From Diplonema japonicum (lineage: Eukaryota > Protista > Euglenozoa: Diplonemea): DNA of 64,000 bases. The DNA is taken from positions 248,001 to 312,000 of the forward strand of contig OZ025680.1 of the NCBI GenBank assembly GCA_964019335.1, given 5' to 3'. The translations under genes were made by a program, and so were the position numbers. Of the stretch, positions 1,142 through 57,525 are shown one piece after another; the stretch's first letter is position 1; each line of letters begins with the position of its first letter. The notes beneath the pieces are model-generated. The model did not search any database. It was not told the origin of the DNA and saw only the letters and a list, made by a program, of their open reading frames with translations.

Positions 1142-1476
1142 AGGCAAAGGGGGATGATTTCCAGTAGTAGTAGTGATTTGGATATGTTGTGTTGAACTGA
1201 GAGGGAAAGAAAGGCAGCTGCGTGTGGCGTCCGGGATTTGTACGAATTCATGTTTGTCGAGACACCCCGTTATTTTGCACGAAAGCTCCAGAGAAGATCT
1301 TGCAGAAGGGTGCTCGGAAACAAAAAGAATTAATTTAAACAACAATAATTCACTATGATAGGAACGAAGTGGTTAGCAACGGCCCGAAAGAATAAACAAA
1401 AAGATTAAGAACATAAGAAAGAAGAACAAATAAAAATAGAATAATTTAAAACAAATATTTTTTCCCTTGTCCCCGC

Positions 1477-4400
1477 CTAAACAACGGTTGTACGCTCCTC
1501 TTTGACGGGTTCGCTATCCGAGAAGGCGGCCTTTGGCTTGCGCAGGAAGAAGTAGTAGACGAGGAAAGCAACGACAGCGACAACAACAAGAGAGCCGAAC
1601 ACGATGCCGACGATGGCGCCCGTCGAGAGCGAGTCGCCCCCGTCGCCCCCCTGCTGGTCCTCCTCCTTCGGAGTAGGAAGCGGTGCCCTCTCGTTGGTCA
1701 CGGTCACGTCCTGCAGCTCCCCGCCCAGCCGGCCCTCGATCATTGCCTTGTTCGCCTGCAGCCTGTCTCGCACCGCCCCATTGTCCATCTCAGAGGGGAC
1801 CCTCAGGTCTGCCCTCACCGTGATGCTCTCCGCCGATCCTTGCTGTGTTGTTATTGCTGCACGCCCTGTCGAAGAGGCTCCCTCCCCACAGGTCACGCAG
1901 TACCCGCTTGTCGCCCTTTCCAGACACACGTTGAAGCAGCTCGCCCTCCCCCCCAGCAACAGCTCCAGTGCGGGCATGAGGTCCCTGCTCCCCGCCACAG
2001 CCTTCCCCATGTCGCTCGAGGCGATGCGGAAGACTGCCTGCACCCCCCTCAGCCCGGTCTCGGGGGAGAGAGTCACCGGCTCCTGCGTGGGAGGGACGGG
2101 TTCAGGTTCCAACGTGGGTGCGGCGGTGACCGGGGGATCCCTGCAGAAGTGCCTTGCCGTGAAGCCCGCTCCCTCTGTTCCGAGGTCGGAGGTGAAGTGC
2201 AGGTACAGGTCCCCGGTGCTGGCAAGAACAGTCGTCTCGTTCCCCGTCACCTCCCCCAGCCACGCCCCCTCCCGCCCGTAGACCCCCACCTTGTCGAAAC
2301 CGGGCTCCAACGAGGCCTCCAACGTCACCCTCGACTCGTGTCCAGCAGGGCACCCAAACCTCCAGCAGCGGCTCTTCAAAGGAAGGTAATCCTCCCTCTC
2401 CGCCTCATCTCCCGAATCAGCAGCAGCAGCAGCAGCAGCAGGGTACTGTACAGTGCGGGAGTAGCTCTCAAAAGAGTGGTCACAGTTCCTGTCGTTCTTC
2501 CCCCACGCGATCGGGTTGCTCGGAACACTCAGCTCGACGCTCCTCTCCGGTACCTCCTCCCCACACAGCCAGCGCAGCTCGAACTTGCTGTCCACCGTCT
2601 CGTCAAAGGCCGCCTTCACCACAATGTCGCCCGTGTAGCCAACATGCACCGTCCCCGTCCCTGTGAACCTGTCCAGCGGGGTCCTTCCGTCAGCCTTGTA
2701 CACCTCCACGTAGTCGTACCCAGCCTCAAGCTCCAGGTTCATCGTCAGCACCTTCACAGGCTTCTCGCAGGTCAGCCGGACACACTTCTCCCTCTGCAAG
2801 GTCAAGGATCCGGTGTCGCTGCCGTAGGTGCTGTAGGCAGAGCAGTGCTCCTTCACCGGGATCAAGGACGAGTAGTCGCACGTCCAGGAGAACGACGCGG
2901 CCGACCCCAGGGGGAGCGCGGCCTCCAGCGACACCGCCGCCGTTTTCGTCATCCTCACCGTGGGGTTTGCCGGACCGAGAGGCAACCCATCGCCGTCGCT
3001 GTTGCTGTTGCTCTTGACAGAGAGGGCCGCCCCAGAAACGTGTGTAAGGGTCAAAGGCACGCTGTAGTCGCAAGTGAGGTCCCAGCAGTGCACAGGGCTG
3101 TCCCTCTCCACCTCCACAAGCCCAGGTACCCTGCTTTGAGGAGCGCATTTATAGTTCCAGCTCACCTGTGCCCAGCCACCCCCACTCTTCGTCATCAGCA
3201 CCGCGTTCCTCGTCACCTCCATGATCTGGTACTGGTAGCCGTTCCCTCCCACGATCCTGTAATTCTCCACCTCGTCCCCTGTGTCCACCTCGAAGCGCCC
3301 GTCGCCTTCTCTCAGGTCGTACGCCACATTGATGTACAGTCGCTCCGGCGGATTCAGCGTGATGTACCAGCAGGTTGTCGTCTCGTCCGTCTCGTTCGTG
3401 CTGAAGCTTCCGGACCACCCGGAGAGGCGTTGGCAGTCTCCCGTGGGTGGCGACAGGGTTCTCGGAGCATCCGTCTCGGGAACCCCGCACGTCCAGTCCA
3501 AGGAGAAGGCCTCCCCGAGCCCGTAGGTCCCGATGTTTCGGATGTTCGAGGTCACCACCACGTCCCCCGTCAGGCTCACCACAATGCTGCGCACAAGGTT
3601 CGCCGCGTATCTGTTGCTGTCCACCACCTGCACGTAGTTCCCCTGAGTCCCCTGGGTCCCCCCCAGAGTGAGGTTCAGCGTCACCGTCTGGTCGCATCGG
3701 ATCGTCCAGCACTCCTTCCCAGTCTCCTCCACGTCTTGGCGGGGATAGGTGAGCACAGCGGCCGTCAGGTCCTGGCACTTGCACGACCAGTTCAGCGTCA
3801 TTGCCTTCCGCGTCCTCCCCAACACCGCAGAGTTCACGTTCGTCGCGACAACCCTGGTCCTGCAGTCAGCCGTCGCAAGAGGGTTCTCCTCCGTGTCGAG
3901 GAGCGGGGTGGAGTAGCCGCACGTCGTTGTGAAACCCCTGAACACAATCTTCTGCGAGGGGAGGGGACACCGGAAGTGCCAGCAGTCCACACCCATCGCA
4001 TCCTCCCCGTTGATCCGGAACCTGTCGTTCTTTTCGTCGTTGTCGTTGTTGTAGTCGACCGTGGTGCAAGACCCCCACCGCCCGCAGCCCCAGCTCAGGG
4101 TCGCGCTCCCGTGGACCACCACCTGCGTTCGGTGTGCGAGGTGCCTGCTCATGAAGGTGTCTTGCCCCCGTACAACCGTCCCCGTCTCCAGGTCCAACAA
4201 GGTCACAGAGCCCACGAGGTTCGCCGCAGAGAAGAGGGACTCCCCGTCGCACCCCACCCGGAAGCAGTCGCCGTTCACCACCGAGGTCGGTGTCCTCGCA
4301 GGGAGCTCCGGACACGGGTCTGCGGGAAGGCAGTTGAACTCCAATTCGAAGGTGCTGAAGGGGCGTGTCTCGTAGACCACCACAACCTCCAGGTTCCCGT

Positions 4401-6606
4401 TCGTGCTGACCCTGTCGGAGGAGCCTTCCCCGAACCCCACCCTCTGCAGCAGCATCTGCTGAGCCCCGTCCCTGATCTCGATGCTCTCGTTGTAGGCGAT
4501 GTGCCACTTCGCGTTCACGACCTCAGACCTCCCCCCGCCCCCGCACTCCAGCAGGTACTTCACAGTCGACCCCGCCGTCGCCTTCCTCGTCACCAGCGCT
4601 GTAGAGCTGACCGTCACTGCACGCCCCTCTTCGAACCCGGGGGGGGTAAAGGGAGCAGGTTCCGGGAGGGGGTTGTTTTTGCACGTCCAGCTGAAGCGGA
4701 ACCCACTCCCCTTCGGGTGGAACCCGGACCTGAAGCGGACCCTCAAGGATCTTCCGAAGGAGCGTGGAGGGGGAGCTGCCTGCCCACTCAGGTGCGTCGC
4801 GACCACCCACTCGCCGTCATCCTTCTCCTCTTCCAGGGTCAGCAGGTCGGTGTTGTCCTCGCTCGTCACGTCCAGGTACTGCCACCTCACCTCCATGTGC
4901 TGCGTGCTGCAGCTCAGTGTCCAGCACTCGTCTGCGAACGCGGGGTAGCGCCCATTGTCCACCGGGTAGCTCAGCACACCACCACCACCACCACCACCAC
5001 CACCACCACCACCTTCTTCTTCGGAAGAGGGAGCCACCGCCGTGCACCTTGGCCTCATCATCGGTGTCTTGCACTCCCAAGAGAACTCGAACTGAGCACC
5101 AACACTCCTCGTTTGAGAGGACACAATCATCGCAGCACCACCGGGGACGACCAAAGGGTGTCCGGGGGAGGTGTCCCCCTCCCACACCTCCTGCTCCGGT
5201 TGGTAGAAGTTGTCCAGACTGTGCAGGTTTGCGAGGTTCATCCCGTCGCTCGGCTCGACAGAACCCATCGTGACGTGGAGCTCCTCCCCGACCGTTGGGC
5301 AGAGCATCACCCAGCACTTCGACTCGAATCGAGTGGTCTTGTAGGACACGGTACCTGTTGTCGAGGTGCTAGGGACGACGCTGCCCCCACAGATGCCCGT
5401 CCCCAGGAACTGAGCCCCGTCTCCCGGGGTCGTCGACTGGCTCTCGTCGCACCGCATGAACAGCGCCTTGTTCGGGGTTGCCTTCACCAGCACTCCCTCC
5501 AGAGCCGACTCCCGCAGCCACACCTTCACGTCCAACGGGGATGCTGCAGGGTTCCCGCTCAAGAAGGCGGCCGCCGCCCCTGCCGCGTAGCCGGCCGCCG
5601 CAGAAGACCCAGACTTCGTCACCCCGCCGTCCAGATCGTCTGCAGAGGCCCCCAGAACCCCCTCACCAGGCGCGAAGAGGTCAGCGTACAGCACAGAGCC
5701 GGTGGTCTCCCCTTCCTTGTTGTGGGCCCCGACAGTGATCACCTCGTCCACCCTTTTGGAGAGAGTGTTCCCCCTGTTGTTCCCGGAAGAGGTCACCACC
5801 GATATCCCGAGCTCAATGAGGGCGCGAACCGCCATGCGCACCGTCTCAGAATCACTGGGGTCGAAGGCCATCACCACGAGGGAGGGGGGCTGTCTCATCA
5901 TCTTGCTGGTGACAGCAACCTGCGTCAGCGCCTCCACCACCCTGCTGCGCAACACGGTCCCAGAGGAGGAAACCACCTTCGTCGACATCACAGTGGCCCG
6001 CCTCGCCACGCCGTAGGTGCTTCCCGCGACAAGGCTCGCGACGTAGGTCCCGTGGCCGTTGTCGTCTCTCTGCAGCTCATCGCTCACCACCCCTTTGTAG
6101 TCCAACCCGTTGTAGCAGCGCCCCTTCAGCTCCCTGTGCCCGCACTCCACTCCAGTGTCGAGGACGAACACATAGACCCCTTCTCCCCACTCAGAGTTGT
6201 GCTTGAAGGATTGTTGGCTTCTGGTGCTGGTGCTGGTGCTGCTGCTGCTGCTTGCCTCCCAGTCCTGCCTGTGTGTGAGCCTGCTGAGACCCCAGAGCCC
6301 TTCCGCCCCAGCAGCCTCCTCGACACAGCCCCCAGGCATCGCGTGCAGCACGTCTTCGTGGACAACATCACGCTCCACAGCCACCCTCCCCTCGAGGAAC
6401 TGTTCAAGCTGCTCCACCTCCCTCTCGCTCACCCCTTTGCAATGCACCGCACTGAAACCCCCGAACTTGAAGGCCGCGCTGCTGGTCCCACACACACGGC
6501 GCACCTCCCGCACGTCCGCCTCCGTGCTGTTCCTGTGCATGGTAACGAGGTATCCCGCGTCGCTCAGCACCCCTGCGCACAGCAAGGGGAGAAGCAAGGC
6601 TCCCAT
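1477..6606 (-). CDS. Type I membrane subtilisin-like (S8) serine protease with I9-like prodomain and multiple CUB/CUB-like domains (copy 1, ~1709 aa)
   Basis: True start is MGALLLPLLCAG (ATG at 6606); the ORF-track extension is (GT)n/poly-A. Triad motifs VLDTG, DDNGHGTYVA and SGSSAA (GTSMA-like), oxyanion SGNN. CUB-like segments such as CWTLSC...LRVRFRSG...GFRFSWTC and CWRFGC...LYLHFTSD...GFTA. C-terminal TM GAIVGIVFGSLVVVAVVAFLVYYFFL. Confidence 0.9.
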   Translation of the reverse strand: MGALLLPLLCAGVLSDAGYLVTMHRNSTEADVREVRRVCGTSSAAFKFGGFSAVHCKGVSEREVEQLEQFLEGRVAVERDVVHEDVLHAMPGGCVEEAAGAEGLWGLSRLTHRQDWEASSSSSTSTSTRSQQSFKHNSEWGEGVYVFVLDTGVECGHRELKGRCYNGLDYKGVVSDELQRDDNGHGTYVASLVAGSTYGVARRATVMSTKVVSSSGTVLRSRVVEALTQVAVTSKMMRQPPSLVVMAFDPSDSETVRMAVRALIELGISVVTSSGNNRGNTLSKRVDEVITVGAHNKEGETTGSVLYADLFAPGEGVLGASADDLDGGVTKSGSSAAAGYAAGAAAAFLSGNPAASPLDVKVWLRESALEGVLVKATPNKALFMRCDESQSTTPGDGAQFLGTGICGGSVVPSTSTTGTVSYKTTRFESKCWVMLCPTVGEELHVTMGSVEPSDGMNLANLHSLDNFYQPEQEVWEGDTSPGHPLVVPGGAAMIVSSQTRSVGAQFEFSWECKTPMMRPRCTAVAPSSEEEGGGGGGGGGGGGVLSYPVDNGRYPAFADECWTLSCSTQHMEVRWQYLDVTSEDNTDLLTLEEEKDDGEWVVATHLSGQAAPPPRSFGRSLRVRFRSGFHPKGSGFRFSWTCKNNPLPEPAPFTPPGFEEGRAVTVSSTALVTRKATAGSTVKYLLECGGGGRSEVVNAKWHIAYNESIEIRDGAQQMLLQRVGFGEGSSDRVSTNGNLEVVVVYETRPFSTFELEFNCLPADPCPELPARTPTSVVNGDCFRVGCDGESLFSAANLVGSVTLLDLETGTVVRGQDTFMSRHLAHRTQVVVHGSATLSWGCGRWGSCTTVDYNNDNDEKNDRFRINGEDAMGVDCWHFRCPLPSQKIVFRGFTTTCGYSTPLLDTEENPLATADCRTRVVATNVNSAVLGRTRKAMTLNWSCKCQDLTAAVLTYPRQDVEETGKECWTIRCDQTVTLNLTLGGTQGTQGNYVQVVDSNRYAANLVRSIVVSLTGDVVVTSNIRNIGTYGLGEAFSLDWTCGVPETDAPRTLSPPTGDCQRLSGWSGSFSTNETDETTTCWYITLNPPERLYINVAYDLREGDGRFEVDTGDEVENYRIVGGNGYQYQIMEVTRNAVLMTKSGGGWAQVSWNYKCAPQSRVPGLVEVERDSPVHCWDLTCDYSVPLTLTHVSGAALSVKSNSNSDGDGLPLGPANPTVRMTKTAAVSLEAALPLGSAASFSWTCDYSSLIPVKEHCSAYSTYGSDTGSLTLQREKCVRLTCEKPVKVLTMNLELEAGYDYVEVYKADGRTPLDRFTGTGTVHVGYTGDIVVKAAFDETVDSKFELRWLCGEEVPERSVELSVPSNPIAWGKNDRNCDHSFESYSRTVQYPAAAAAAADSGDEAEREDYLPLKSRCWRFGCPAGHESRVTLEASLEPGFDKVGVYGREGAWLGEVTGNETTVLASTGDLYLHFTSDLGTEGAGFTARHFCRDPPVTAAPTLEPEPVPPTQEPVTLSPETGLRGVQAVFRIASSDMGKAVAGSRDLMPALELLLGGRASCFNVCLERATSGYCVTCGEGASSTGRAAITTQQGSAESITVRADLRVPSEMDNGAVRDRLQANKAMIEGRLGGELQDVTVTNERAPLPTPKEEDQQGGDGGDSLSTGAIVGIVFGSLVVVAVVAFLVYYFFLRKPKAAFSDSEPVKEERTTVV

Positions 6607-6862
6607 TGTTCTTGGTTTCTTTTTTTTTTTTTTTTTTTTAACGAGTAAACTGTTGAAAAGGTAAAAAAGCAATGTGAAGAGAGTGCCAAGGAGAGAATAG
6701 CAGAAAGAAAAGAGAGAAAGAGAGGGAGAAGCAGCGATCGCTTTTAAGTTCTTAGAAAAACAAAACAAAAGAAAAATGGGTAGATATCTTCTCGAAATTA
6801 TCGACGAAGAAAATTTAAAAAAAGAAAAAGGAAATGGGTGTTTGAAGTAGTCACCCCTTTCC

Positions 6863-6863
<1 letters not shown>

Positions 6864-6915
<52 letters not shown>
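6864..6915. repeat. (CA)n microsatellite (also at ~54610-54661)
   Basis: Perfect CA dinucleotide run. Confidence 0.95.
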
Positions 6916-6918
<3 letters not shown>

Positions 6919-7066
6919 CCTTCATGGATCAGTACCCTCGAAAGAGCCACATGAAGGGGTGTTTTTTTGGGAGAAGGGACAACTCTGGCAGAAAACAAAC
7001 AAAATAGAGAGAGGGAAAAGCATAAGAAACACAAACACAACTTCTTTCAATCAGCAGTAGTGAAGA

Positions 7067-7097
<31 letters not shown>

Positions 7098-7249
7098 TCC
7101 TTTTCCACCGTGTTCGACAAAGAGAAGAAAAGAATTCCCTGCGATGGGCGAGTGTGTTAGCAACAACGCCCATCCAAAGAAAAAGAAAGGAGGGGAATAT
7201 ATAGGAGAAGACTGGGGTCCCTGATCCGGGAACCCCTCATCCTTTTCTC

Positions 7250-7285
<36 letters not shown>

Positions 7286-7543
7286 AAAAACACCATTCCC
7301 CTTGCTGCTGCTGCTGGGGTGGTGGGAATAAAAAGAAAGAAGAATTGAAGAATTTAAAAAAAAAAAAGAGAGACATTTAAGGGTACCTGCGGTGTGTGGC
7401 AGGACGCCTAAAAAAAAAAAAAAAAAAAAAACCGTCCTTTTTGAGACACATAGGACGGATAGGTGTTTGCTGCTCCGTGGTAAAAAAAATAGAGAGAGGG
7501 GGGTCTCTTTTGCTTTCTCTTCTCTTTTTTTTTCCCCACTCTA

Positions 7544-8182
7544 TCACTCTCTTGTCTCCCTCCTCACAATTCTCATGGGAAGCTCTGCGGTGGTTGCGAA
7601 GATGATCCTCCCGCAGAGGGCGAGGCAGTCCCTCCCGTTGCACTGCTGGTGGCAGCCATCGTGCGCGACGTCGAAGCACTCCTCGTCTGCCCCGCAGGTG
7701 GTGGGGTGGATCCCACCGCAGGCCTGCCCAGTTGTCTTCGCGCACACCCCGAGGCAGTCCGCTCCCCCGCAGTCCGGGCTGCACTCCTTCCTGTACATGC
7801 AGGTCTCCCCAGTCCCGCACTGCAGCCCTGCAACCCCCCCGCACTCCTTCTCCACCTTCACCTCGAAGCACTTCCCCAGGCAGTCCCTCCCGTTGCACCC
7901 TGCGTTGCACCCGTCAGCCACAGTGTCCACACACATCTCCTCTCCCTTGCACTTCAGCCCAGCGATCCCCCCGCACTCCCCGTACTTCCTCTTCGCACAG
8001 ATCCCTCCGCAGTCCGCTCCCCCGCACTCCTTCACACACCCCGTGTTCCGAGGGTCCGGGATGCACTCCAACCCAGAGGGGCAGCCAAGGCCCGCGATCC
8101 CCCCGCACTGCATCGGTTCCGCCGCTCCAACCACTGCCACCACAGCCATCATCACAGACAACAAAGCAAGAGGAGAGCTCAT
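7544..8182 (-). CDS. Secreted Cys-rich repeat protein (4 x CGGIAGLxC...GxDCxGxC), copy 1
   Basis: Signal peptide MSSPLALLSVMMAVVAVVGA followed by four ~43-aa repeats, each with 6 Cys. Confidence 0.85.
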   Translation of the reverse strand: MSSPLALLSVMMAVVAVVGAAEPMQCGGIAGLGCPSGLECIPDPRNTGCVKECGGADCGGICAKRKYGECGGIAGLKCKGEEMCVDTVADGCNAGCNGRDCLGKCFEVKVEKECGGVAGLQCGTGETCMYRKECSPDCGGADCLGVCAKTTGQACGGIHPTTCGADEECFDVAHDGCHQQCNGRDCLALCGRIIFATTAELPMRIVRRETRE

Positions 8183-9088
8183 TTTTCGAGGGAGGGTTTT
8201 TCTTTTTTTTGTTGAGAATACGGTAAAAAGTAACCTTTTTGATTTTTTTGGTTAATAGTTGTTGTGTTGTCTTGAGGACAGGGAACTAAAAATAAAAAAG
8301 AATAGAAGGTAACTTCTGTGTGGCCAAGAAGAAGGAGAAGAGATGGAGGAGGAGAAGGCAGGACAGGAGGAAGAAGAATAAGATACAACCGTAAAACAGC
8401 ACACAAAGTATTCTATTTCTTTTTATATTTTTCTTCCCTTTTAAATACTAAAGGATCAACTGCAAATGGACCGTTCCCACTGAAGAAGTCACTGTGCTTC
8501 CTAATGTGGGGGTGTAGAGTCCCCAGTGTCACACCCCTTTTTACTCTGCTACATGTTTTACGGTTCTTTCCGGCTTTCCCCCCTGTCCCTGCCGACTTGC
8601 AACACCTGCACCATTCCATTATATTACTAGCCCAACACAGCAAGCACACGGGTGCTCGAAAAGAGAAAAAAAAGAATATTTTTTGAAAACAAGAGCATAG
8701 TAGCACTCTATTTTTTTCCCCCCTCTTTTTTTTTTTCTTTCTTCCCACTTTATTCTTTTCTCGGCCCCTCAAACGAGAGAAAACATGCCACACGTCCCAC
8801 GAGCAGGGGGAGGGGTGCTATAGCACGGTGGCTATGATGCACTCCTCCCCAACATGTGGTACACAACAGGACCAAAAGAGAAAAAGAAAAAGAGAAAAAG
8901 AGGAAAAAAAAAAAAAAAAAAAAAGAAGAAGAGAGAAAAAAATAAGTGAGCACATGTAAGGAGGAAGGAAAATGAAACCAGCGAGGCAACAAGAGGAGGT
9001 CCGCTTGTTGGCCCCACCTGAGTCAAGAAAACAATCAGATCGCGAAAACTAAAACACCGCTAAAAACTTTTCAGTCCTCACTCCTCCT

Positions 9089-9778
9089 TTACCTACAACC
9101 AGCAGGCTTCGTCCCTTCCCAGTCCTTGCAAACTGTCTCGAGGAGGTTGTCGCTGTTCCTGAGGACCTTCCCGTTCACTGTGAAGTAGGGGACGTAGTTG
9201 AGACCCTTGACCATGACGGTGGCCCTGGCTGCGACAGCCATGAGGGTCTTCCCGGAGGAGCCCGACTGGCAGGAGGTGATGACCGCCGGGTTCAGGTTGT
9301 ACTGCTGCGCACACTTCTCCATGTGCGCCTTCGACCCCGCACCGGGCTCGTGCGCCTCGTAGCAGTCCACGAAGGGCATGTACTTCCACGGGTCGTTGTT
9401 CGTCATGTTCTTCACGCACACCTCCACGAGGTTCCCGTAGCACTCCCCGCTCCCGTGCTGGCAGTTGATCGGCCCCGTGAAGCAGTCCGACGGGATCGGC
9501 GGCGTCGCCCCAAGCCCGCACTTCCTCTTCCAGCACGAGTAGTCGTTCTTCGGGTCCGCGCACTCCTTGATCTCCACGAACGCGTTCCCGAACGGCACGT
9601 AGTCGAAGTCCATGATCCCCTGGATCCCCTCCGCCGCTAGGGTCTGCTTCACAGGTCCCTTCACGGCCGCCTTGCACCCGGGTCACAGAGACTCCCCGTA
9701 GAACATCACCTCCACCTTCTCCTGACCGCTCACCGCAACCGCAAGCAGCAGCACCGAGGCAACAGATCTTCCGAGCAT
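9089..9778 (-). CDS. GILT: GILT (gamma-interferon-inducible lysosomal thiol reductase) family protein with in-frame TGA in a UxxC motif; probable selenoprotein (229 aa), copy 1
   Basis: The frame extends upstream of the tracked ORF: MLGRSVASVLLLAVAVSGQEKVEVMFYGESL[TGA 9685-9683]PGC. GILT signatures YxESLCPxC, VPFGNA, CQHGxxECxxN and YVP are present. Confidence 0.88.
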
Positions 9779-11372
9779 TCTTTTAATTATTTATTTATTT
9801 ATTTATTCTCTTTTTTTTTTTTTTTTTTTTTTCTTTTTTTTTTTTTTTTTGTCAGAGTTGTTGTTGTTGTTGTTATTGTAAAAAATAAAGGTGAGGAAAA
9901 AAATAAGGAAACAAACAAGGAGAGAAAGAATTAGGGTGATCCACCATTTGGTTATGCCCAACCTCAGGCATTCCAACGTATGGGGTTGTAAAGGAGAACC
10001 ATGGAAGATATTTAAAGAGAACAAACGAGGGGGGAAAAAAGGGGGGGGTGAAGCAAAAAATAGAAAAACAAGGAAAATAAAAGGCTTGTGATGTAGGTTC
10101 GTTATATAAAGCAACCCCCCACAAAAAGCCCTTCCTCTTTGATTTTTCTCTTTTTTTTGGGGGGGGGGAAAGGGGATCAATCTATAAAATTTTATTTCCT
10201 TTTTTTTTTTTCGTGCTCTTGTGTTTCGCAGCAAGCAAAAAGCAAGGCACTACAAAAACACAAAAAATTTTTATGAAAACAAAATACAGATTCTTATGGG
10301 AATACGAGAGGAAGAAACAAAACGGGTAAAAAAAAAAAAAAAAAAAAAAAAAAGAAGGACCGCTCTTAAATAAAAGAAGAGCGGGAAGAAAGGTCGTTGG
10401 CTTCAATATCACGGAGGCTCTAACAAGCCGCTTTGTGTTGCCAACGAGCTTCCCTTCCCCTCCTTTTGAAAGTAAGTTTATTTTGTCATAACTGCCACAA
10501 TTCTTCTTTGGCGCAGAATGCTTTATAAACGCCCATGACCGATGTCAATCATGGTGTCATTCAACAAAAAAAAAAAAAAAAAAAAAAGAAAATAATAATA
10601 AGAGAAGAAAGGTGGCCAGTGTTGGTGGCGCTTTGCTTTAAAAGAAAAAAAATTAAACAAAAGCAACAACACAAAGTGCACTTTTACCTTTCCGCCAGTA
10701 GCTTCCTGGTGGTTTAGTTCAAAAAGAAATTCGCAAAAACTATATGTCAGTTGTTGGTTCGCGCACATATAGTTATAAAAAAGATCATAATAAATAATTA
10801 AAAAAAAAAAAAAAAAAAAAAAGGTTGTCTCGATCATAGTGGTGCCACACAGTATGTGACACCCTTGTGAAGCTTCGCCCGAAGCCTCCCAAGTCCCCCT
10901 GTGGTCCCGTAGAATGACTGTAAAAGTGGAGGTACAGAATTCCTTTTGAAATAGGGAGAGGGGCTGCAAAAGAATCGAAGAGGTTAATAAAGCTGTTGTT
11001 CCAGCCATAAAAAAAGGCGGACGAAAATAAATAAAAAAAGAATAAGGGGGGGTGGGGAGAAAAAATGAGGTGGCTCGCATGGCAACACCTTCATCTTTTC
11101 TTCGTAAAAGCTAGAGTAAAAAAGAATCAAGAAGGGAAACAAGATAGTGTCCAGCTACTCACCTGGTAGCGAGAGACAAAACAATACGGGGGAGGAGGAA
11201 GGAGGACAGGAAAAAAAAGAGGGAAAAAAAAACACCGACCGAGTAAGATGAGGTCAAGGTGTGTCCCGGCGGCAGTGTGGTTTGTACCGCCATCTTGTGT
11301 AAGTTGGGAATTAGAAGTGTTAAAATAGGAAATAGAAATAGAAAAAAAATGAGAGGAAAACGCGTAGATTTT

Positions 11373-14300
11373 TCACTTTACACTGCCACCGCATCCCCTG
11401 GCAGGGCTGACCGTACCGCCAACAGCCTTCGACCAAGCACCCATCAGGTCGTGAGCGGCATTCCAGAAGAAGGCCCCACCGTTGCAGGCATACTCCTGCT
11501 TCAAGTCGTTCATAACACTGACCGCCTGCTGTGCATTGCTGTTGGAGTTGGTGCCTCCACAGTCGCTGATGCAGAAGCCGAACACCACCTTCGTGGGATC
11601 GCTCCCGAAGCAGTCCTCGACAAGGGTCTTGAAGTGTGCCAGAGCAGAGGAGAAGACCCCCCCGTTGATCCCGTCCGTGTTGGGGCGCGTGATCCCGTTG
11701 TAGTACTGCGGCATGACGAAGTCCACAGAGCCTGCCACCTCCCTGATGATGTCGAAGTAGCGGGTTCCCTTCGCAAGGTCGATGTCCACAGGGGAGTGTG
11801 TCACGAGGCTCCCGGTGGGGAGGTTCTGCTTCAACCCCACTGTCACTTCCTTCAGGAAGGCTTGTGCTTGTGCCCCCTTTGCGAACGACGACCCGCGCTG
11901 CCCGTCCTCGTAGTAGTACTCGTAGTCGAGGTTGATCCCGTCGAAGCCCTGGCTGCTCGCGACCGCCACCAGCTGCCGCACCACGGAGGCCTCCTTTCCG
12001 TAGCAGTGTTCCCAGCAGTCGTTCAGCCCGTCCCACGAGCCCCCCATCCCGGCCCCGCCGAAGGACAGCATCACCTTCTTCCCGGCCGCTTTCCACTTCG
12101 CCACGAGCTCGGGTTGTGGGGAGTTCCCGCAAACGGGCACAGACCCTGTGATCTTGCACTGCTGGTTGCACTGGTTCCCTCTGGGAGTCCACGTGTAGGT
12201 CACTGCGAAGGACACGAGGATGTGTGTGTAGGCCTCCATCTGGGCGTCTGTGGGACATGCTTGCCAGTTCCCGATGTAGGCGATGAGCCTGCTGTCAACA
12301 GAGGCGGTGGAGAGAGCGGGGGTCGGGGCCGTGACCGTGGCTGGGGAGGGGTTGGTCGGGACGCCGCCTCCACTATTGCCACCGCATCCCCTGGCAGGGC
12401 TGACCGCACCGCCAACAGCCTTCGACCAGGCACCGTTCGTGTCGCGAAGGGAGTTCCAGAAGAAGGCCCCACCGTTGCAGGCATACTCCTGCTTCAAGTC
12501 GTTCATAACACTGACCGCCTGCTGTGCATTGCTGTTGGAGTTGGTGTCCCCACAGTCGCCGATGCAGAAGCCGAACACCACCTTCGTGGGATCGTTCCCG
12601 AAGCAGTCCTCGACAAGGGTCTTGAAGTGTGCCAGAGCAGAGGAGAAGACCCCCCCGTTGATCCCGTCCGTGTTGGGGCGCGTGATCCCGTTGTAGTACT
12701 GCGGCATGACGAAGTCCACAGAGCCCGCCACCTCCTTCATGATGTCGAAGTAGCGGGTCCCCTTCGCAAGGTCGATGTCCACAGGGGAGTGTGTCACGAG
12801 GCTCCCGGTGGGGAGGTTCTGCTTCAACCCCACTGTCACTTCCTTCAGGAAGGCTTGTGCTTGTGCCCCCTTTGCGAACGACGACCCGCGCTGCCCGTCC
12901 TCGTAGTAGTACCCGTAGTCGAGGTTGATCCCGTCGAAGCCCAGGCTGCTCGCGACCGCCACCAGCTGCCGCACCAGGTGTTCCTCCTTTCCGTAGCAGT
13001 GTTCCCAGCAGTCGTTCAGCCCGTCCCACGAGCCCCCCATCCCGGCCCCGCCGAAGGACAGCATCACCTTCTTCCCGGCCGCTTTCCACTTCGCCACGAG
13101 CTCGGGGTGTGGGGCGTTTCCGCAAACGGAGACCGGCGTCAAGTCGCACTGCTGGTTGCACTGGTTTTTCATGGGACCCCACGTGTAGGTCACTGCGAAG
13201 GACACGAGGATGTGTGTGTAGGCCTCCATCTGGGCGTCTGTGGGACACTCTTGCCAGTTTCCGATGGAGGCAACAAGCCTGCTGTCCCCTGAAGAAGAAG
13301 AAGAAGAAGAAGAAGAAGAGGGGGGGGTTGCAGGAACAGAAACAGGAGCGGGTTGAGGAGTAGAGGGTGCAGAGGTTGTCTCGTCGACGACTGTGATGGT
13401 CTGGGTTCGGCTGCTGCCTTCAGCTGTGGCTCCGGTGCACTCCGACTTCGGGAAGAAGGGGAGGATGGTCCACACACGGTTGACCGTCCACTGACCGTTC
13501 CCGTTCGACCCCTCCACGGGGACAGGGTCGCTGTCCATGTAAAAAACGTCGAACTCTTGGCTGCAGGCAGAGGCCCCCTCTGCCAACCCCAGCACCGTGG
13601 GGTCGGTCGACTGCTCCGTGTTCACGCGGGTGTCCGCTGGGAAGGAGGCGAAGACGGGCGAAATCGGCTCAACCGTGATGATCTGGGTCACCTCCTCCGA
13701 GACGCCGCCGCAAACGGGGCTGTCGCGGAGCTGCCACGTCACCTCCAAGAAGGAGGACCCGCACACCCTGTTCGGGAACTGCGACTCCGGAAGCACGCGT
13801 TGCCTCAGAAGGTTCACCCTCGCCCCCGAGGTGCACGCGGGGTCGACAAACCAAGGCAGGGGCTTCAGGCTCTCCAGGTTCACCGGTTGATCACAGCGGA
13901 AGGTGTAGGAGGTGGCTCCCCCGAGAACAGGGCGCTTCCGGAGCACCATCCCCGCCTCGCTGCTCACCTCGCCGTTCAGGAGGGCCTGCTTTTCCAACGC
14001 CTTGTCCGCCATCGCCGACACCATCCTGTTTTGCGTGTTCCGCACGCTCGCCTCGTAGCTCGCCTGGCTGCTCAGGTCGTACGGCATGTTCGACAGGGTC
14101 ACCTCCGCCTCGGAGGCCGACAACCCGCCTCCCGACCCCTTCCCCCCGTAGGTCCTCACCCCGCCGCTGAAACCCCCGGAGGCAGTCGCCGCGTTCGACC
14201 CGAACGGCACCATCACCGTCGACTTCGGAAGCGACGGCATCGGGACCTCCATCCCCGAGGCGATGTTCTGCAACCCGGGGTTCTCCTCCTTCGACCCCTC

Positions 14301-17300
14301 GATGATCGCGTTCTTCTGCGCCATCTCGTCCGTCTTCGTCTTCACATCCGCAGCGGCGAGGGCCACCTCCTCCATGCACCCGGGGTCCGCGTACCTCGGC
14401 CCGTGCTTCGTCTTGCAGGTCTTCCCGAAGAAGCAGAACAGGTGGCACCAGCACTCTTTCCACTGCGCCCTCAGATACCTGCAACCGTACTCGTTCCTGC
14501 CCCCTGCCCCCACGATCCTGTGGCCCGCCGTGTGGAACAGCCCGCTGATGCTCCCGATGGACTGCGCCGCCCCTTCGAAGTCCCCTCGAAGGAGCCTCTC
14601 CCCCGCCCTCACGATGTCCCCGAGGACCGGGATCCCCTTCAGCCACGTCACCGCGTCCCGAAACGCCGCCGCCACGTTGTTCAGGAACTCCTCCACCTTG
14701 TCCTTGATGTACCTGAGGGTGGTCTCGAAGATCCTCTTCACCTTGTTCCACAGCACCGTCACCTTCTCCGAGATGTAGTTCCAGGCCTCCGTCGCAGCCT
14801 TCGCGATCGCCTTCACCGCCACGTTGATCCCGTCCACGATCTTCTGCCCGAGGTCCCCCAAGGACACCGACACCGAGATGTCGAACTCCGAGTCCTCGAA
14901 CCTCTTCGCCACAACGGCGTGCCCGCTCACCGTCGTCTCCACCAGCGCCAAATCCAGCGTCACCGCGAAGTCGATCACGTTCCCGTTCACCTCCACCCTC
15001 GCCCGCAGGTTGATGAACAGGACCTGGATGTCGCAGGAGAAGATGGCGTACGGGATCGGGCGGTTCAGGTCGTACATGAAGAGGACCTGTCGGATCTTCA
15101 CGATCTCCAGGAAGTTCATGTCCCGCAGCTCCATCTTGAAGAAGGTGAGGTCCCAGTTCCAGGTCACGTGAACGTGCGAGGACAGCGCCCCGTCGAAGAG
15201 GTCGATCCCTGCCCTGAAGGAGAAGATGTCCGCGTTCAGGGTAACGTTCAGGTAGCCGTACGACCTCAGCATAGGGATGTCGAAGGCTCCCCCGATGTCG
15301 ATCAGGGCCCGCGGCTGCGGCTTCACCTGCAGGTCCACCAGGAACTTCGCCCCGCCCACCGCCACCTTGTTCTCCAAGCGGTTCCCGATGCGGAGCTGGA
15401 AGGCCCCGATTTTCAAGTCCACGTGGTCCATCCAGGCGTCGATGTAGAAGCGCGTCTTGCTCACCGCGAGGTCGATCGCGATCTCCCACCCGAGGAAGTT
15501 CAAACGCCCCTGCAGAGCGACCCCCGCAGGGATCACCACGTCCCCGCTCCTGAACGACAGCCTCTGCTCCTTGATCGGGCTGAAGGAGAAGAAGGCGAAG
15601 CACTCCAAATCCAGCGTCGTCTCGTTCGCGTAGCCGTCCAGCTTCCCCGCACACCTCGTCTTGTAGTCCTTGTCGAAGGGGTAGATCCCCGACTCCGCGA
15701 GCTTCCCGGGGATCACCACCTTGTCCAGGGCTGGAACGTAGTCCGACAGCACGTCGATGATCCCGCCGATCGTGAGCTCCGACACCATCGCGATGAAGAA
15801 GTTGTCCTCGGGGACCGTCCCGCTCACCCCGACGTAGGTGCGCCCCTCGATGTACGCCCCCGTCTTCGTCGTGCAGCTTCCTTCCTTCCCGAAGCAGACC
15901 GCTCCCCCCAGGGTGAACCCGGTCGGGACCGGCGACTTCAAATCCCACTCCACCCCGAGGATGACGTCCCCGATGTGCAGGAAGGGGAGCCCCAGGGCCC
16001 GGTACCACCACCCGTCCAGCTTCAGCGACCCCCGCACCAGCTGCGCCGACGGGCTCACCACCAGAGACAGGTCCCCGATCAGGAACAGGAAGCGCCTCTC
16101 CTCATAGTCCTCCTTGCAGCGCTCCACGCAGATCTTTAGAGGGATGTTCACCCCGAGCTTCGACAGCGGCAGCCCCCCGAAGTTGTGCTCGTACTGCGCG
16201 TAGATGCTCATCCCGAGCGTCCCCTCCACGTTCACGATCGCGAAGTTGCTCTCCGAAGTGTCCGGGTCCGTCCCGATCCGCAGCTCCAGCAAGGCCGACC
16301 CGGAGAACTGAAGCTCCGCGCTCGCCGACACTCGGAAGTTCTCCGTCACGTCCCCCACCACCTCCAAGAAGTCCCCTTCCAGGATGTCCGGCAGCTTCGG
16401 AGACCCGATCGCGTACAGCTTCACCCCCGAGGTCGTCGCCGCCAGTGCGAGCTTCGTGTCCTGGATCCCGAACGACAGCACGGGAGACAGGGCTGTGTCC
16501 AACGCCTGCGCCACCCCTTCGTCGAAGTTGCTCGTCACCAAATAGGCCACGTTCGCCATCGTCAGCTCCTCCACCCACACGCTCGCCTCCACCCCGTCGC
16601 ACGCGGGGGTCTGCCCGATCCGTCCCACTCCAGACACTGTCGTCGTCGGGGTTGGAGCCGCGCAGTTTCCGAGACAGAAAGGCATCGTCACTTCTCCCTT
16701 CTGCAGAATCGGTTTCATGAGCTCCAAGAAGTCTCCGAGGTCTGACGAAGCGTCCAGAAGTTCTCTTGTGCTGTGCTTCGTGGTGGTGGTGGTGGTGGTG
16801 GTGTTGACGCCGTCGTTCTTGTTGTCGTCGCCCTTCACAATGCTAGTGTACATGCGTGCCCCCGTAGCAGTGCTCGCAGAAGCGGAGTCCATGGGACAAG
16901 CAGAAGGGTCGTATGCCACACTCGCTCCCTTGTTCGAGTCCTCCAGCGTCACCGCCATCCCCAAGCTGAACCCGATCCCTGACCACTTGTTCCCCTTGGC
17001 GTCCGTGATGGAGCTCCTCTTCTGGCTCAACCATGATCTCGGGAGCTCCTTGACCGCCTCTTTGATCTTCCCTGCAAGTCCGTCCAGCGCGAAGTCCATG
17101 TCCCTGATCGCCTCCCTGTTCTTCTTCTTGAAGATGTGCTTCCCCCACGACTTCAAGCTCACCCCGAATCCTCCGAACAGCACGTTCTCCCACCAGGTGC
17201 TCGCCGAGATCACCTCGACACACCTCCAGTGCGGGTGCGTGAACACGATCGTGATCCCGTCGATCCCCACCGTCGACGAGATGATGGCAGGCATGTCGAT

Positions 17301-18554: not shown

Positions 18555-19191
18555 CTTGTCAACCTTAACAGAAGGGACGGTTGGGGTGCCTTCTTGGTTT
18601 CTCTTTTTCTTCTTCTTCTTCTTCTTTTTGTGTGTGTATTAACCTGTAGGTGGTAAACTAGAGGGGGAAATGAAGTTGGGAAACGGAAAAAAAAGCAGAG
18701 GTAAATAAGATAAGAAAAAGAAAGAGTCGGCTGTTGTTGTTTTGTACAAGCCGATTGAAACCTACTGAAGGTTAACCGACAAGTTCTACCCACTCTTTTC
18801 AGCAAAGACAGTTGTCAAAAGCTTTTTAAAAGGGGGAAACAATTGAAATGAAAAGCTAGGTTTTCAAAAATTAAATAAGACTAAGTTTGAATCTCATTGA
18901 CATTTGGGTGTCGAGTCAAAGAGAGCAAGGTGTGTGTTCCAATTCATTTTTTATCTCAAAGAAGAAAAAAGGGAAAGTGACCCAACGATCCCATGACCGT
19001 AAGGACAACTCATCAGTATGGATAAGTTTCATAAAATTTATTCAGCGGGAGGTAAACATATACGTATTCAGAGAACACAAAGCCCTGGTGTCCATTCAGC
19101 TCAGCGTTATTGAACAAAGACTGGCTTTGTGTGTTGGTGTTTTTGATTTTTTTCTTTGTGTACTTGCTTCTGGAGTAGAATTATTTCATTT

Positions 19192-20253
19192 TCAGCCAAT
19201 CCTTTCGCCACCCCAGTAGTTGGCCCCGGGCTTCACACACTGTGCGTACCACCTGCTCTGCTTGTAGCACCCCGCACCGGTAACACAGCAGCTCGGCGCC
19301 TGTAAACAGTTGCCCCACAGGGGAACAACAAAGGAGCAGCTGCCAGGGGAAGGTGGCGGTGTGGCAGGAGGAGTCGGTGTGGAAGGTTGCGGTGTGGGGA
19401 CAGGGGTCGGTGGCGAAGGGGTGGGAACGGGTGTTGGGGGCGAGGGTGTGGGAACAGGTGTAGGAAGGGGTGTCGGAGGGGGCGTAGGAGGGTGGGGGGT
19501 CAGGTTTGCAGGTCTGCAATGCGCGAACCACTTGTTCACCTGGTGGCACTTGGCCCCAGGCGCACAGCAGTGCTGTTCGTTGAGGCATGTCGCCCACAGT
19601 GGGATCACACGCGAGCACGAGGCGGGAGGGACAGGGACAGGCGGTACCGGAACAGGAGGGACAGGCGGGACGGGGTTGCCACCACCACCGCCGCGGAAGT
19701 CCAAGTCAATAGCGTTGTAGAAGGTGTTGGCCGTGTCACCGACGTCCCAGACGGCGAGGACGACGTGGTAGCCCGCCTTGGAGGGGAGGGTGCAGGAGTG
19801 CGTCGTCAAAGTCTGCGGCTGCATCATGTTCCCCATCACGGAGCAGAAGGGGGTCCCCTCGAAGCTGCTCCTCGCAAGCGGCGCATTCTCGTCCCACCCG
19901 TCCTTCGTGATGTAGTACCTCCAGTCCAGGGTCGCGTGGTTCGCCTCGAACCACCAAGTGAAGTCTGTTTGCCCAGCAGACGCTGCTGTCCTCGCCCACC
20001 TCGTCGACGTCTGCTCGTTCAGCGGTGTCCATCTGTTGCTCCCCGCTGCAGCCAGTGTCCCGTCAGGGGGGCCGCTCACAGGGTACCTGTCCGGGCCCTC
20101 CACGCTCTGAGGCTCATACTGCACCGCACCGCAGTTCTGGTTCTCCCCCCCGGTCCTGCACATGTAGTTCCTCGAAGGAGGGACCTTCACGTACCCGTGG
20201 CCCTCTACACCCGCTGCTGCAAGCAGCACGGGGAGTGCTAGGCGGTGCAACAT
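19192..20253 (-). CDS. AA10 lytic polysaccharide monooxygenase (CBP21/GbpA-like) with Pro-rich linkers and two CBM1-like modules
   Basis: An 18-aa signal peptide is followed directly by His (HGYVKVPPSR). Motifs YEPQSVEG, second His in ANHA, WRYYITK and AVWDVGDTANTFYNAIDL. Two C-terminal W..C...CC..G..C.....W(F/Y)A(H/Q)C modules. Confidence 0.93.
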   Translation of the reverse strand: MLHRLALPVLLAAAGVEGHGYVKVPPSRNYMCRTGGENQNCGAVQYEPQSVEGPDRYPVSGPPDGTLAAAGSNRWTPLNEQTSTRWARTAASAGQTDFTWWFEANHATLDWRYYITKDGWDENAPLARSSFEGTPFCSVMGNMMQPQTLTTHSCTLPSKAGYHVVLAVWDVGDTANTFYNAIDLDFRGGGGGNPVPPVPPVPVPPVPVPPASCSRVIPLWATCLNEQHCCAPGAKCHQVNKWFAHCRPANLTPHPPTPPPTPLPTPVPTPSPPTPVPTPSPPTPVPTPQPSTPTPPATPPPSPGSCSFVVPLWGNCLQAPSCCVTGAGCYKQSRWYAQCVKPGANYWGGERIG

Positions 20254-54352: not shown

Positions 54353-54608
54353 TGTTCTTGGTTTCTTTTTTTTTTTTTTTTTTTTAACGAGTAAACTGTT
54401 GAAAAGGTAAAAAAGCAATGTGAAGAGAGTGCCAAGGAGAGAATAGCAGAAAGAAAAGAGAGAAAGAGAGGGAGAAGCAGCGATCGCTTTTAAGTTCTTA
54501 GAAAAACAAAACAAAAGAAAAATGGGTAGATATCTTCTCGAAATTATCGACGAAGAAAATTTAAAAAAAGAAAAAGGAAATGGGTGTTTGAAGTAGTCAC
54601 CCCTTTCC

Positions 54609-54664
<56 letters not shown>

Positions 54665-54812
54665 CCTTCATGGATCAGTACCCTCGAAAGAGCCACATGA
54701 AGGGGTGTTTTTTTGGGAGAAGGGACAACTCTGGCAGAAAACAAACAAAATAGAGAGAGGGAAAAGCATAAGAAACACAAACACAACTTCTTTCAATCAG
54801 CAGTAGTGAAGA

Positions 54813-54845
<33 letters not shown>

Positions 54846-54996
54846 CCTTTTCCACCGTGTTCGACAAAGAGAAGAAAAGAATTCCCTGCGATGGGCGAGT
54901 GTGTTAGCAACAACGCCCATCCAAAGAAAAAGAAAGGAGGGGAATATATAGGAGAAGACTGGGGTCCCTGATCCGGGAACCCCTCATCCTTTTCTC

Positions 54997-55032
<36 letters not shown>

Positions 55033-55929: not shown

Positions 55930-56835
55930 TTTTCGAGGGAGGGTTTTTCTTTTTTTTGTTGAGAATACGGTAAAAAGTAACCTTTTTGATTTTTTTGGTT
56001 AATAGTTGTTGTGTTGTCTTGAGGACAGGGAACTAAAAATAAAAAAGAATAGAAGGTAACTTCTGTGTGGCCAAGAAGAAGGAGAAGAGATGGAGGAGGA
56101 GAAGGCAGGACAGGAGGAAGAAGAATAAGATACAACCGTAAAACAGCACACAAAGTATTCTATTTCTTTTTATATTTTTCTTCCCTTTTAAATACTAAAG
56201 GATCAACTGCAAATGGACCGTTCCCACTGAAGAAGTCACTGTGCTTCCTAATGTGGGGGTGTAGAGTCCCCAGTGTCACACCCCTTTTTACTCTACTACA
56301 TGTTTTACGGTTCTTTCCGGCTTTCCCCCCTGTCCCTGCCGACTTGCAACACCTGCACCATTCCATTATATTACTAGCCCAACACAGCAAGCACACGGGT
56401 GCTCGAAAAGAGAAAAAAAAGAATATTTTTTGAAAACAAGAGCATAGTAGCACTCTATTTTTTTCCCCCCTCTTTTTTTTTTTCTTTCTTCCCACTTTAT
56501 TCTTTTCTCGGCCCCTCAAACGAGAGAAAACATGCCACACGTCCCACGAGCAGGGGGAGGGGTGCTATAGCACGGTGGCTATGATGCACTCCTCCCCAAC
56601 ATGTGGTACACAACAGGACCAAAAGAGAAAAAGAAAAAGAGAAAAAGAGGAAAAAAAAAAAAAAAAAAAAAGAAGAAGAGAGAAAAAAATAAGTGAGCAC
56701 ATGTAAGGAGGAAGGAAAATGAAACCAGCGAGGCAACAAGAGGAGGTCCGCTTGTTGGCCCCACCTGAGTCAAGAAAACAATCAGATCGCGAAAACTAAA
56801 ACACCGCTAAAAACTTTTCAGTCCTCACTCCTCCT

Positions 56836-57525
56836 TTACCTACAACCAGCAGGCTTCGTCCCTTCCCAGTCCTTGCAAACTGTCTCGAGGAGGTTGTCGC
56901 TGTTCCTGAGGACCTTCCCGTTCACTGTGAAGTAGGGGACGTAGTTGAGACCCTTGACCATGACGGTGGCCCTGGCTGCGACAGCCATGAGGGTCTTCCC
57001 GGAGGAGCCCGACTGGCAGGAGGTGATGACCGCCGGGTTCAGGTTGTACTGCTGCGCACACTTCTCCATGTGCGCCTTCGACCCCGCACCGGGCTCGTGC
57101 GCCTCGTAGCAGTCCACGAAGGGCATGTACTTCCACGGGTCGTTGTTCGTCATGTTCTTCACGCACACCTCCACGAGGTTCCCGTAGCACTCCCCGCTCC
57201 CGTGCTGGCAGTTGATCGGCCCCGTGAAGCAGTCCGACGGGATCGGCGGCGTCGCCCCAAGCCCGCACTTCCTCTTCCAGCACGAGTAGTCGTTCTTCGG
57301 GTCCGCGCACTCCTTGATCTCCACGAACGCGTTCCCGAACGGCACGTAGTCGAAGTCCATGATCCCCTGGATCCCCTCCGCCGCTAGGGTCTGCTTCACA
57401 GGTCCCTTCACGGCCGCCTTGCACCCGGGTCACAGAGACTCCCCGTAGAACATCACCTCCACCTTCTCCTGACCGCTCACCGCAACCGCAAGCAGCAGCA
57501 CCGAGGCAACAGATCTTCCGAGCAT
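56836..57525 (-). CDS. GILT: GILT family probable selenoprotein, copy 2 (TGA at 57432-57430)
   Basis: Identical to 9089-9778, including the in-frame TGA. Confidence 0.88.

What the first reader, a model, noticed from the sequence alone, without database searches (positions are those of the whole stretch)
9089..9778. Hidden selenoprotein: GILT with a UPGC active site, missed by the ORF track
Seen: ATG at 9778, a signal peptide, then FYGESL-TGA-PGC continuing in frame into a complete GILT domain. The TGA (codon 32) occupies exactly the first, catalytic Cys of the family motif YESLCPxC. Many neighbouring genes end in TGA, so this is not a global code change. Established: Sec typically replaces the nucleophilic Cys in CxxC redox motifs; to my recollection Sec-GILT has been reported in some algae, while trypanosomatids have only a few selenoproteins and GILT is not among them. 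Inference: a secretory-pathway selenoenzyme in a euglenozoan, present in two copies. The copies are too similar to count as independent evidence.
Basis: partly seen in the sequence, partly recalled or inferred. Interest (0 to 1): 0.82.

Follow-up and report, generated by a model that had tools for sequence, protein, structure and literature searches.

The report
Selenocysteine GILT thiol reductase, Diplonema
Two identical genes in this window encode a secreted or lysosomal disulfide-reducing enzyme (GILT) whose catalytic cysteine is replaced by a TGA codon almost certainly read as selenocysteine. The selenoprotein family is already known; here it appears as a family of at least ten genes in the marine protist Diplonema japonicum.

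Summary
Window 9778-9089 (-) and its identical copy 57525-56836 (-) are 229-codon frames. Each has a signal-peptide-like start, FYGESL-TGA-PGC at codon 32, and a GILT domain carrying the family signature CQHGx2ECx2Nx4C.

The TGA is not an error or a pseudogene lesion:
- All ten GILT loci scored in the genome (seven distinct sequences, about 45-90% identical) keep TGA at this codon. Neighbouring codons vary synonymously, and pN/pS is below 1 on both sides in nearly all comparisons.
- Eleven distant homologues have TGC/TGT at this position.
- An unrelated metagenome contig has TGA here, followed by a canonical SECIS.

The genome matches Diplonema japonicum. It carries tRNA-Sec, SepSecS, a Sec-containing SPS2, at least two Sec glutathione peroxidases and Sec peroxiredoxin-like genes. 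TGA is the commonest ordinary stop in the window.

A SECIS-like kink-turn hairpin with a UGUGAY core (not AUGA) lies in the 3' UTR of every Sec gene family examined except one doubtful GPx. The window's candidate is at 8533-8455. It rests on motif and paralogue conservation only; a covariance model built from other GILT paralogues did not find it.

Sec-GILT has been published (ocean metagenomes 2008, algae 2020). This scan already noted the family on other DNA of the same genome. Verdict: real, a new member of a known kind.

The parts
9089..9778 (-). Sec-GILT gene, copy 1. It has 229 codons including the in-frame TGA; the stop is TAA at 9091-9089.
   Evidence: A transcriptome protein of D. japonicum (P0010) is identical from Met56 onward.
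9725..9778 (-). Predicted signal peptide, MLGRSVASVLLLAVAVSG.
   Evidence: Read from the sequence. A hydrophobic N-terminus is kept in all paralogues. No signal-peptide predictor was available.
9683..9685 (-). In-frame TGA, codon 32: the proposed selenocysteine, first residue of the U-P-G-C redox motif (9685-9674).
   Evidence: TGA is invariant in 7 distinct paralogues while the preceding Leu codon varies (CTG/CTC/CTT/ATG). It aligns with Cys TGC/TGT in 11 metagenome homologues and with TGA in L023.
9416..9463 (-). GILT family signature, CQHGSGECYGNLVEVC.
   Evidence: The motif definition CQHGX2ECX2NX4C is from PMC7017176.
8444..8543 (-). Candidate SECIS of copy 1. The 5' core UGUGAC is at 8533-8528 and the 3' core UGAU at 8458-8455, about 555 nt after the stop.
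   Evidence: The core is shared with the GILT-C paralogues and conserved with paralogue L001 in an otherwise diverged UTR. The same UGUGAY core occurs in SPS2, GPx and Prx-like Sec genes. It was not detected by Rfam or by model R1, and it folds no better than shuffled sequence.
56836..57525 (-). Sec-GILT gene, copy 2, with a coding sequence identical to copy 1. The TGA is at 57432-57430.
56191..56290 (-). Candidate SECIS of copy 2. The 5' core is at 56280-56275 and the 3' core at 56205-56202. The 100 nt are identical to copy 1.
8788..8859 (-). Conserved hairpin of unknown role in the 3' UTR, with apex CAUAGCCACCGUGCUAU. Copy 2 has it at 56535-56606.
   Evidence: The 17-mer occurs only 4 times in the 62.5-Mb genome, each time behind an A-group GILT gene. 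The lower stems differ between the window copy and L001, but both pair (reading).

Best explanation
Both window genes encode a secretory-pathway GILT-type thiol reductase. Its attacking active-site residue is selenocysteine, in a U-P-G-C motif replacing C-x-x-C.

Inferred mechanism: UGA at codon 32 is recoded by tRNA-Sec. A SECIS kink-turn hairpin in the long 3' UTR directs this; in this organism the core reads UGUGAY...NGAN instead of AUGA...GA. The mature enzyme enters the ER through its signal peptide. It then reduces substrate disulfides in a lysosome, digestive vacuole or outside the cell: Sec32 attacks the disulfide and Cys35 resolves the selenenylsulfide. Sec stays ionised at acid pH, so a selenolate would suit an acidic compartment.

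Shown here: the frame, the conserved TGA, the Cys/Sec alignment, family membership, the Sec machinery, other Sec genes and transcription. Inferred: actual Sec insertion, the exact SECIS of the window copies, localisation and chemistry.
For: - Frame and motifs.
- All 10 scored GILT loci in the genome carry TGA at the same codon, and no Cys paralogue was found.
- Seven distinct paralogues keep TGA although synonymous sites differ by 13-66%.
  - pN/pS for the whole upstream part is 0.27-0.78 in the seven pairs with an informative number of synonymous changes.
  - pN/pS downstream is 0.07-0.71.
  - The adjacent Leu codon varies synonymously.
- Eleven distant homologues have Cys (TGC/TGT) at the aligned codon. 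One independent marine contig, L023, has TGA plus a canonical AUGA...UGAU SECIS.
- Sec machinery and other Sec genes:
  - tRNA-Sec scores 72.9 bits and has anticodon TCA.
  - SepSecS scores 384 bits.
  - SPS2 has its own G-TGA-GCK.
  - Three GPx have TGA at the NVASxUG site.
  - Prx-like genes carry W-TGA-PPC.
- Transcription: D. japonicum Trinity ORFs are identical to the window copy and to two paralogues, and each starts at the first Met after the TGA.
- TGA is the usual stop in the window.
- SECIS:
  - The hairpins of the B and C paralogues share a structure in which 11 of 31 pairs carry compensatory changes.
  - A model built from them finds the D paralogue's hairpin as the only hit in 92 kb (21 bits, E 0.011).
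  - A UGUGAY 5' core opposite an NGAN 3' core recurs in GILT A-D, SPS2, GPx L020 and Prx-like UTRs.
Against: - There is no protein-level evidence of selenium.
- Rfam SECIS models find nothing in these UTRs. They also miss the canonical SECIS of L023, so this counts for little.
- The window's own SECIS candidate is not found by model R1.
- It folds no better than shuffled sequence (z = +0.56).
- It shows only one-sided changes against its paralogue.
- It lies about 555 nt after the stop, beyond a long pyrimidine tract. Its presence on the GILT mRNA is therefore assumed, not shown.
- A simple descriptor scan did not separate it from background.
Confidence: 0.88

Rival explanations
1. The UGA is read through, but by a near-cognate or suppressor tRNA inserting Cys, Trp or Arg rather than selenocysteine. 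The protein would be full length but contain no selenium.
For: All paralogues have UGA followed by C (TGA CCC G). From general knowledge, this is a weak termination context. The SECIS of the window copy is not firmly established.
Against: The site is the Cys/Sec position of a redox motif. The genome has a complete-looking Sec toolkit and other classical Sec genes. Conserved structured hairpins with a kink-turn core follow the GILT genes. TGA is the main genuine stop in the window.
Confidence: 0.06
2. The TGA is a true stop. The genes are pseudogenes, or they express only the part from Met56, which lacks a signal peptide and the CxxC site.
For: Automatic ORF callers on transcriptomes start the protein at Met56 or its equivalent.
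Against: The signal peptide and the QxKVxVxFYGES block upstream of the TGA are conserved in frame. pN/pS is below 1 there, and there are no other stops or frameshifts in seven diverged paralogues. Ten independently retained pseudogenes with the same single lesion are implausible. A Met56 product would lack the active site.
Confidence: 0.04
3. Sequencing or assembly error produced a false TGA.
For: None found.
Against: The same codon occurs at ten loci on six contigs. The published assembly is from 102-fold PacBio HiFi data. The transcriptome ORFs break at the same place.
Confidence: 0.01

Closest known systems
Sec-containing GILT, described from Global Ocean Sampling reads (Zhang and Gladyshev 2008, PMC2398784) and listed among rare algal selenoproteins (PMC7539508)
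   Same: Same protein family, with Sec at the first position of the CxxC motif and a eukaryotic SECIS in the 3' UTR. L023 from the metagenome scan is such a gene.
   Different: The host here is a named, cultured heterotrophic diplonemid. In 2008 the source organisms were unknown. The family is expanded to at least 10 genes with no Cys paralogue seen. The SECIS core reads GUGA rather than AUGA. The closest non-diplonemid Sec-GILT found (L023) is only 35% identical.
Cys-type GILT (human IFI30, plant OSH1)
   Same: Pfam PF03227, a signal peptide, the CxxC position, the CQHGx2ECx2Nx4C signature and many conserved cysteines.
   Different: Sec replaces the first active-site Cys. No interferon or MHC context applies. 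The neighbouring genes suggest a digestive role.
Kinetoplastid selenoproteome (SelK, SelT, SelTryp)
   Same: Sister lineage within Euglenozoa, with the same Sec toolkit.
   Different: Kinetoplastids are reported to have three selenoproteins, and GILT is not among them. This diplonemid has Sec-GILT, Sec-SPS2, Sec-GPx and Sec Prx-like genes. The one Rdx-family (SelT/SelW-like) gene read through its motif has Cys.
Eukaryotic type II SECIS element
   Same: A hairpin with tandem G.A/A.G kink-turn core, helix II, unpaired A residues on the 5' side and a further helix.
   Different: The base before UGA is G (UGUGAY) in every Sec-gene candidate found here. The upper arms are long: 61-120 nt lie between the two core halves. 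Rfam models do not score them.

Membership tests
GILT (PF03227) | Match to the family profile above the curated cut-off | tested here: met
   The downstream piece scores 56.1 bits against a cut-off of 22.4. In paralogue C64 the N-terminal half of the profile spans the TGA.
GILT (PF03227) | CxxC active-site motif near the N-terminus | tested here: met
   The motif is U-P-G-C at codons 32-35. It aligns with C-P-G/D-C of 11 homologues.
GILT (PF03227) | Signature CQHGX2ECX2NX4C | tested here: met
   CQHGSGECYGNLVEVC at codons 106-121. The definition is from PMC7017176.
GILT (PF03227) | Signal peptide and secretory or lysosomal routing | tested here: inconclusive
   A hydrophobic N-terminus and a conserved N-x-T/S sequon (NQS in paralogue D) are seen by eye. 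No predictor or localisation data were available.
GILT (PF03227) | Disulfide reductase activity at acid pH | not testable with these tools
   This needs recombinant enzyme.
Eukaryotic selenoprotein | In-frame UGA aligned with Cys in homologues, with coding conservation on both sides | tested here: met
Eukaryotic selenoprotein | Sec machinery in the genome (tRNA-Sec, SepSecS, SPS2) | tested here: met
   eEFSec, SBP2 and PSTK were not searched.
Eukaryotic selenoprotein | SECIS element in the 3' UTR | tested here: inconclusive
   Paralogues B, C and D are well supported by covariation and the model hit. For the window copies there is only a motif-level candidate at 8533-8455, and both R1 and Rfam are negative.
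Eukaryotic selenoprotein | Selenium in the protein | not testable with these tools
   This needs 75Se labelling or mass spectrometry.

The most novel reading that the evidence does not exclude
Diplonemids, among the most abundant marine heterotrophs, may have a sizeable selenoproteome that standard tools miss. Their SECIS would use a UGUGAY (GUGA) core with long upper arms. Their whole GILT family, at least ten genes, would depend on selenium, tying their digestive disulfide reduction to ocean selenium supply.
Probability: 0.55. Interest if true: 0.6.

Novelty: new member of a known kind. Interest (0 to 1): 0.5.

Why it matters
- **Host organism.** When Sec-GILT was described from ocean metagenomes in 2008, no host organism was known. 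This places the family, expanded, in a cultured diplonemid with a chromosome-level genome, so it can be tested directly.
- **Euglenozoan selenoproteomes.** They are not uniformly small: kinetoplastids are reported to have three selenoproteins.
- **Annotation.** All ten genes are likely to be mis-annotated as truncated proteins. Transcriptome ORF callers already start them at the first Met after the TGA.
- **SECIS detection.** The recurrent GUGA core suggests SECIS detectors need adjusting for this lineage.

Tried and rejected
- **Rfam.** Scans of the window's 3' region and of seven paralogue loci at E up to 10 gave no SECIS hit. I discounted this because Rfam also missed the canonical SECIS of L023.
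- **My own descriptor scan** (TGTGAY, then GA, with a 3-bp stem and constrained energy) over the window. It was not specific: GC-rich coding regions dominated, and the Sec codon context of the window copies itself matched.
- **Covariance model R1**, built from the B and C hairpins. It found D but not the window/A-group candidate, SPS2 or GPx elements. A genome-wide run returned only its training sequences.
- **MAFFT alignments.** Aligning all SECIS candidates misplaced the 3' cores, as did the A1/A2 pair. No covariation statistic exists for the A group.
- **The CAUAGCCACCGUGCUAU hairpin** was considered as an alternative SECIS. I rejected it because it has no UGA/GA core.
- **The TGTGACA motif close to the stop in B paralogues** was rejected because it has no 3' GA partner.
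The nucleotide sequences of the D. ambulator, Flectonema and Lacrimia orthologues and the 393-kb ENA contig could not be checked.
The pieces were searched separately.

Full report
**Observation.**
- On the minus strand an ATG at 9778 opens a frame of 229 codons ending at TAA 9091-9089.
- The only interruption is TGA at codon 32 (window 9685-9683), in FYGESL-TGA-PGCK.
- Stops lie in frame just upstream of the ATG, so this is the first possible start.
- The first 18 residues (MLGRSVASVLLLAVAVSG) look like a signal peptide.
- The piece after the TGA matches Pfam GILT at 56 bits. It carries CQHGSGECYGNLVEVC, which fits the family signature CQHGX2ECX2NX4C.
- A second copy with an identical coding sequence lies at 57525-56836. 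It sits inside an 8.3-kb duplication (1476-9784 versus 49216-57531, 99.8% identical) that ends 6 nt upstream of the ATG.

**Is TGA a general sense codon? No.**
- Of the 16 minus-strand ORFs of at least 250 aa in the window, 11 end in TGA.
- Frames of up to 2393 codons are free of it.

**Organism.**
- The downstream piece finds transcriptome proteins of Diplonema japonicum. They are 100% identical to the window copy (P0010), to paralogue L001 (P0001) and to paralogue L009 (P0005).
- The published D. japonicum assembly is 62.30 Mb from 102-fold HiFi reads. The window's genome is 62.5 Mb.
- These genes are therefore transcribed.
- Relatives in D. ambulator, Flectonema neradi, Lacrimia lanifica, an ENA contig and Logan contigs are all 170-187 aa. 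Nearly all start at the first Met after the expected Sec site. The longer Lacrimia isoform (P0016, 247 aa) has the same start.
- That pattern is what an ORF caller produces when it stops at a TGA.

**Independent evidence for the TGA.**
- A profile search of the whole genome gave ten GILT loci on six contigs. Every one has TGA at the same codon, in FYGE[SA][LM]-TGA-P[GA]C.
- They form seven distinct sequences, down to roughly 45% identity.
- In a codon alignment TGA is invariant, while uncorrected synonymous differences between paralogues reach 0.4-0.66.
- pN/pS for the whole upstream part is 0.27-0.78 in the seven pairs with an informative number of synonymous changes, and 0.07-0.71 downstream.
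- The Leu codon next to the TGA varies: CTG, CTC, CTT, and ATG in one paralogue.
- No Cys-type GILT was seen in this genome.
- In a metagenome scan, 11 distant homologues have TGC/TGT exactly at this position (C-P-G/D-C).
- One unrelated marine contig (L023, 35% identical) has FYGEAH-TGA-PGC followed by a canonical AUGA...UGAU hairpin.

**Sec machinery and other selenoproteins in the genome.**
- tRNA-Sec scores 72.9 bits against a gathering score of 47, and ARAGORN calls it SeC with anticodon TCA.
- SepSecS scores 384 bits.
- SelD/SPS2 scores 208 bits and carries its own G-TGA-GCK.
- Three glutathione peroxidases have TGA at the NVASx-U site, beside one Cys form. One of the three, L022, has an atypical motif and is doubtful.
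- Peroxiredoxin-like genes carry W-TGA-PPC.

**SECIS.**
- Rfam gives no hit. It also misses the textbook element of L023, so that negative carries little weight.
- The 3' UTRs of the paralogues are otherwise diverged. In B1/B2 and C1/C2 the conserved islands coincide with a long hairpin.
- RNAalifold on B and C gives a common structure in which 11 of 31 pairs carry compensatory double changes.
- In that structure an unpaired UGUGAY sits on the 5' side and a GA on the 3' side of helix II. Unpaired A residues follow, then an ACCAG/CUGGU helix. This is the layout of a type II SECIS.
- A covariance model built from B and C only found the D paralogue's hairpin as the single hit in 92 kb (21 bits, E 0.011).
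- The same core (UGUGAY opposite NGAN at the base of a hairpin) is present behind several other genes:
  - SPS2: UUGUGAC...CUGAA.
  - GPx L020: AUGUGAU...GGAA.
  - The Prx-like genes: UUGUGAU, then a 9-of-10-bp helix, then GGAA.
- GPx L019 has the hexamer, but I could not place its 3' partner. GPx L022 lacks it.
- The hexamer occurs about once per 2.6 kb in the window (49 sites on both strands).
- Finding it in the UTR of eight independent gene groups is therefore unlikely by chance. My rough estimate is below 1e-3.

**The window's own SECIS candidate is weaker.**
- It lies at 8533-8455 (copy 2: 56280-56202).
- It shares UGUGACAC and GUUGAUC with the C paralogues and is conserved with L001.
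- It is not detected by model R1.
- It folds no better than shuffled sequence.
- It shows only one-sided changes against L001.
- I therefore call it probable, at about 0.6.

**Mechanism.**
- Shown: a conserved, transcribed GILT frame with UGA at the nucleophilic Cys position, in a genome equipped for Sec.
- Inferred:
  - SECIS-directed Sec insertion.
  - Entry into the ER.
  - Disulfide reduction by Sec32, with Cys35 as the resolving residue.
  - A benefit from the low pKa of Sec in an acidic compartment.
- The neighbours fit a digestive role. They are a 1812-aa subtilase, a secreted Cys-rich protein, a 2393-aa GH18 chitinase-like protein and an LPMO10, all on the same strand.

**Comparison with what is known.**
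- Sec-GILT was described as a new eukaryotic selenoprotein family from ocean metagenome reads in 2008, with the hosts unknown.
- It is listed among the least widespread algal selenoproteins.
- Kinetoplastids are reported to have only SelK, SelT and SelTryp.
- Searches of the held library found no paper on diplonemid selenoproteins.
- Two earlier notes of this scan, on other pieces of the same genome, reached the same reading for the tandem GILT genes and their long hairpin. My results agree with them and rest on my own tests.

**Verdict.** This is a real feature and a new member of a known kind. The family size and the GUGA core are the parts most worth following up.

Noticed in passing
window 8788-8859 and 56535-56606 (-): A conserved hairpin with apex CAUAGCCACCGUGCUAU lies in the GILT 3' UTR. 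The 17-mer occurs only four times in the genome, always behind an A-group GILT gene (C5 and three copies on C33). It has no kink-turn core, and its function is unknown.
   Followed up: partly
G000 loci L016 (SPS2), L020 (GPx), L056/L057 (Prx-like), L002/L007/L008/L009/L010 (GILT): Every SECIS candidate found in this genome has G, not A, before the UGA of the core (consensus UGUGAY). Arms are often long. Rfam SECIS models do not score the GILT candidates, the only ones scanned.
   Followed up: partly
window 1476-9784 and 49216-57531: An 8.3-kb segmental duplication, 99.8% identical, carries a 1812-aa subtilase, a secreted Cys-rich ORF (7544-8182) and the GILT gene. A third GILT copy with an identical protein lies about 27 kb upstream of the window, at C33:221166-221336 (L004).
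   Followed up: partly
window 11373-20253 (-): A 2393-aa protein has a C-terminal GH18 domain and internal 993-nt direct repeats (11384 and 12377, 95% identical). An LPMO10 gene follows. Together with the subtilase they form a one-strand cluster of secreted hydrolases.
   Followed up: no
G000:C8:141761-143056 (L056, L057) and C77:410891-411139: Peroxiredoxin-like genes carry W-TGA-PPC. The tandem C8 pair has a compact SECIS-like hairpin (UUGUGAU...GGAA) about 360-410 nt after the stop. The C77 locus shows an in-frame TGA in the profile match but was not read.
   Followed up: partly
all ten GILT loci, Sec codon context: The TGA is always followed by CCC G (UGA-C), while the preceding codon varies.
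   Followed up: no
L023 (Ga0307391_10202952): A marine contig has a Sec-GILT (FYGEAH-TGA-PGC) and a canonical AUGA...UGAU SECIS with a long arm. The host is unknown, and the protein is 35% identical to the window protein.
   Followed up: partly
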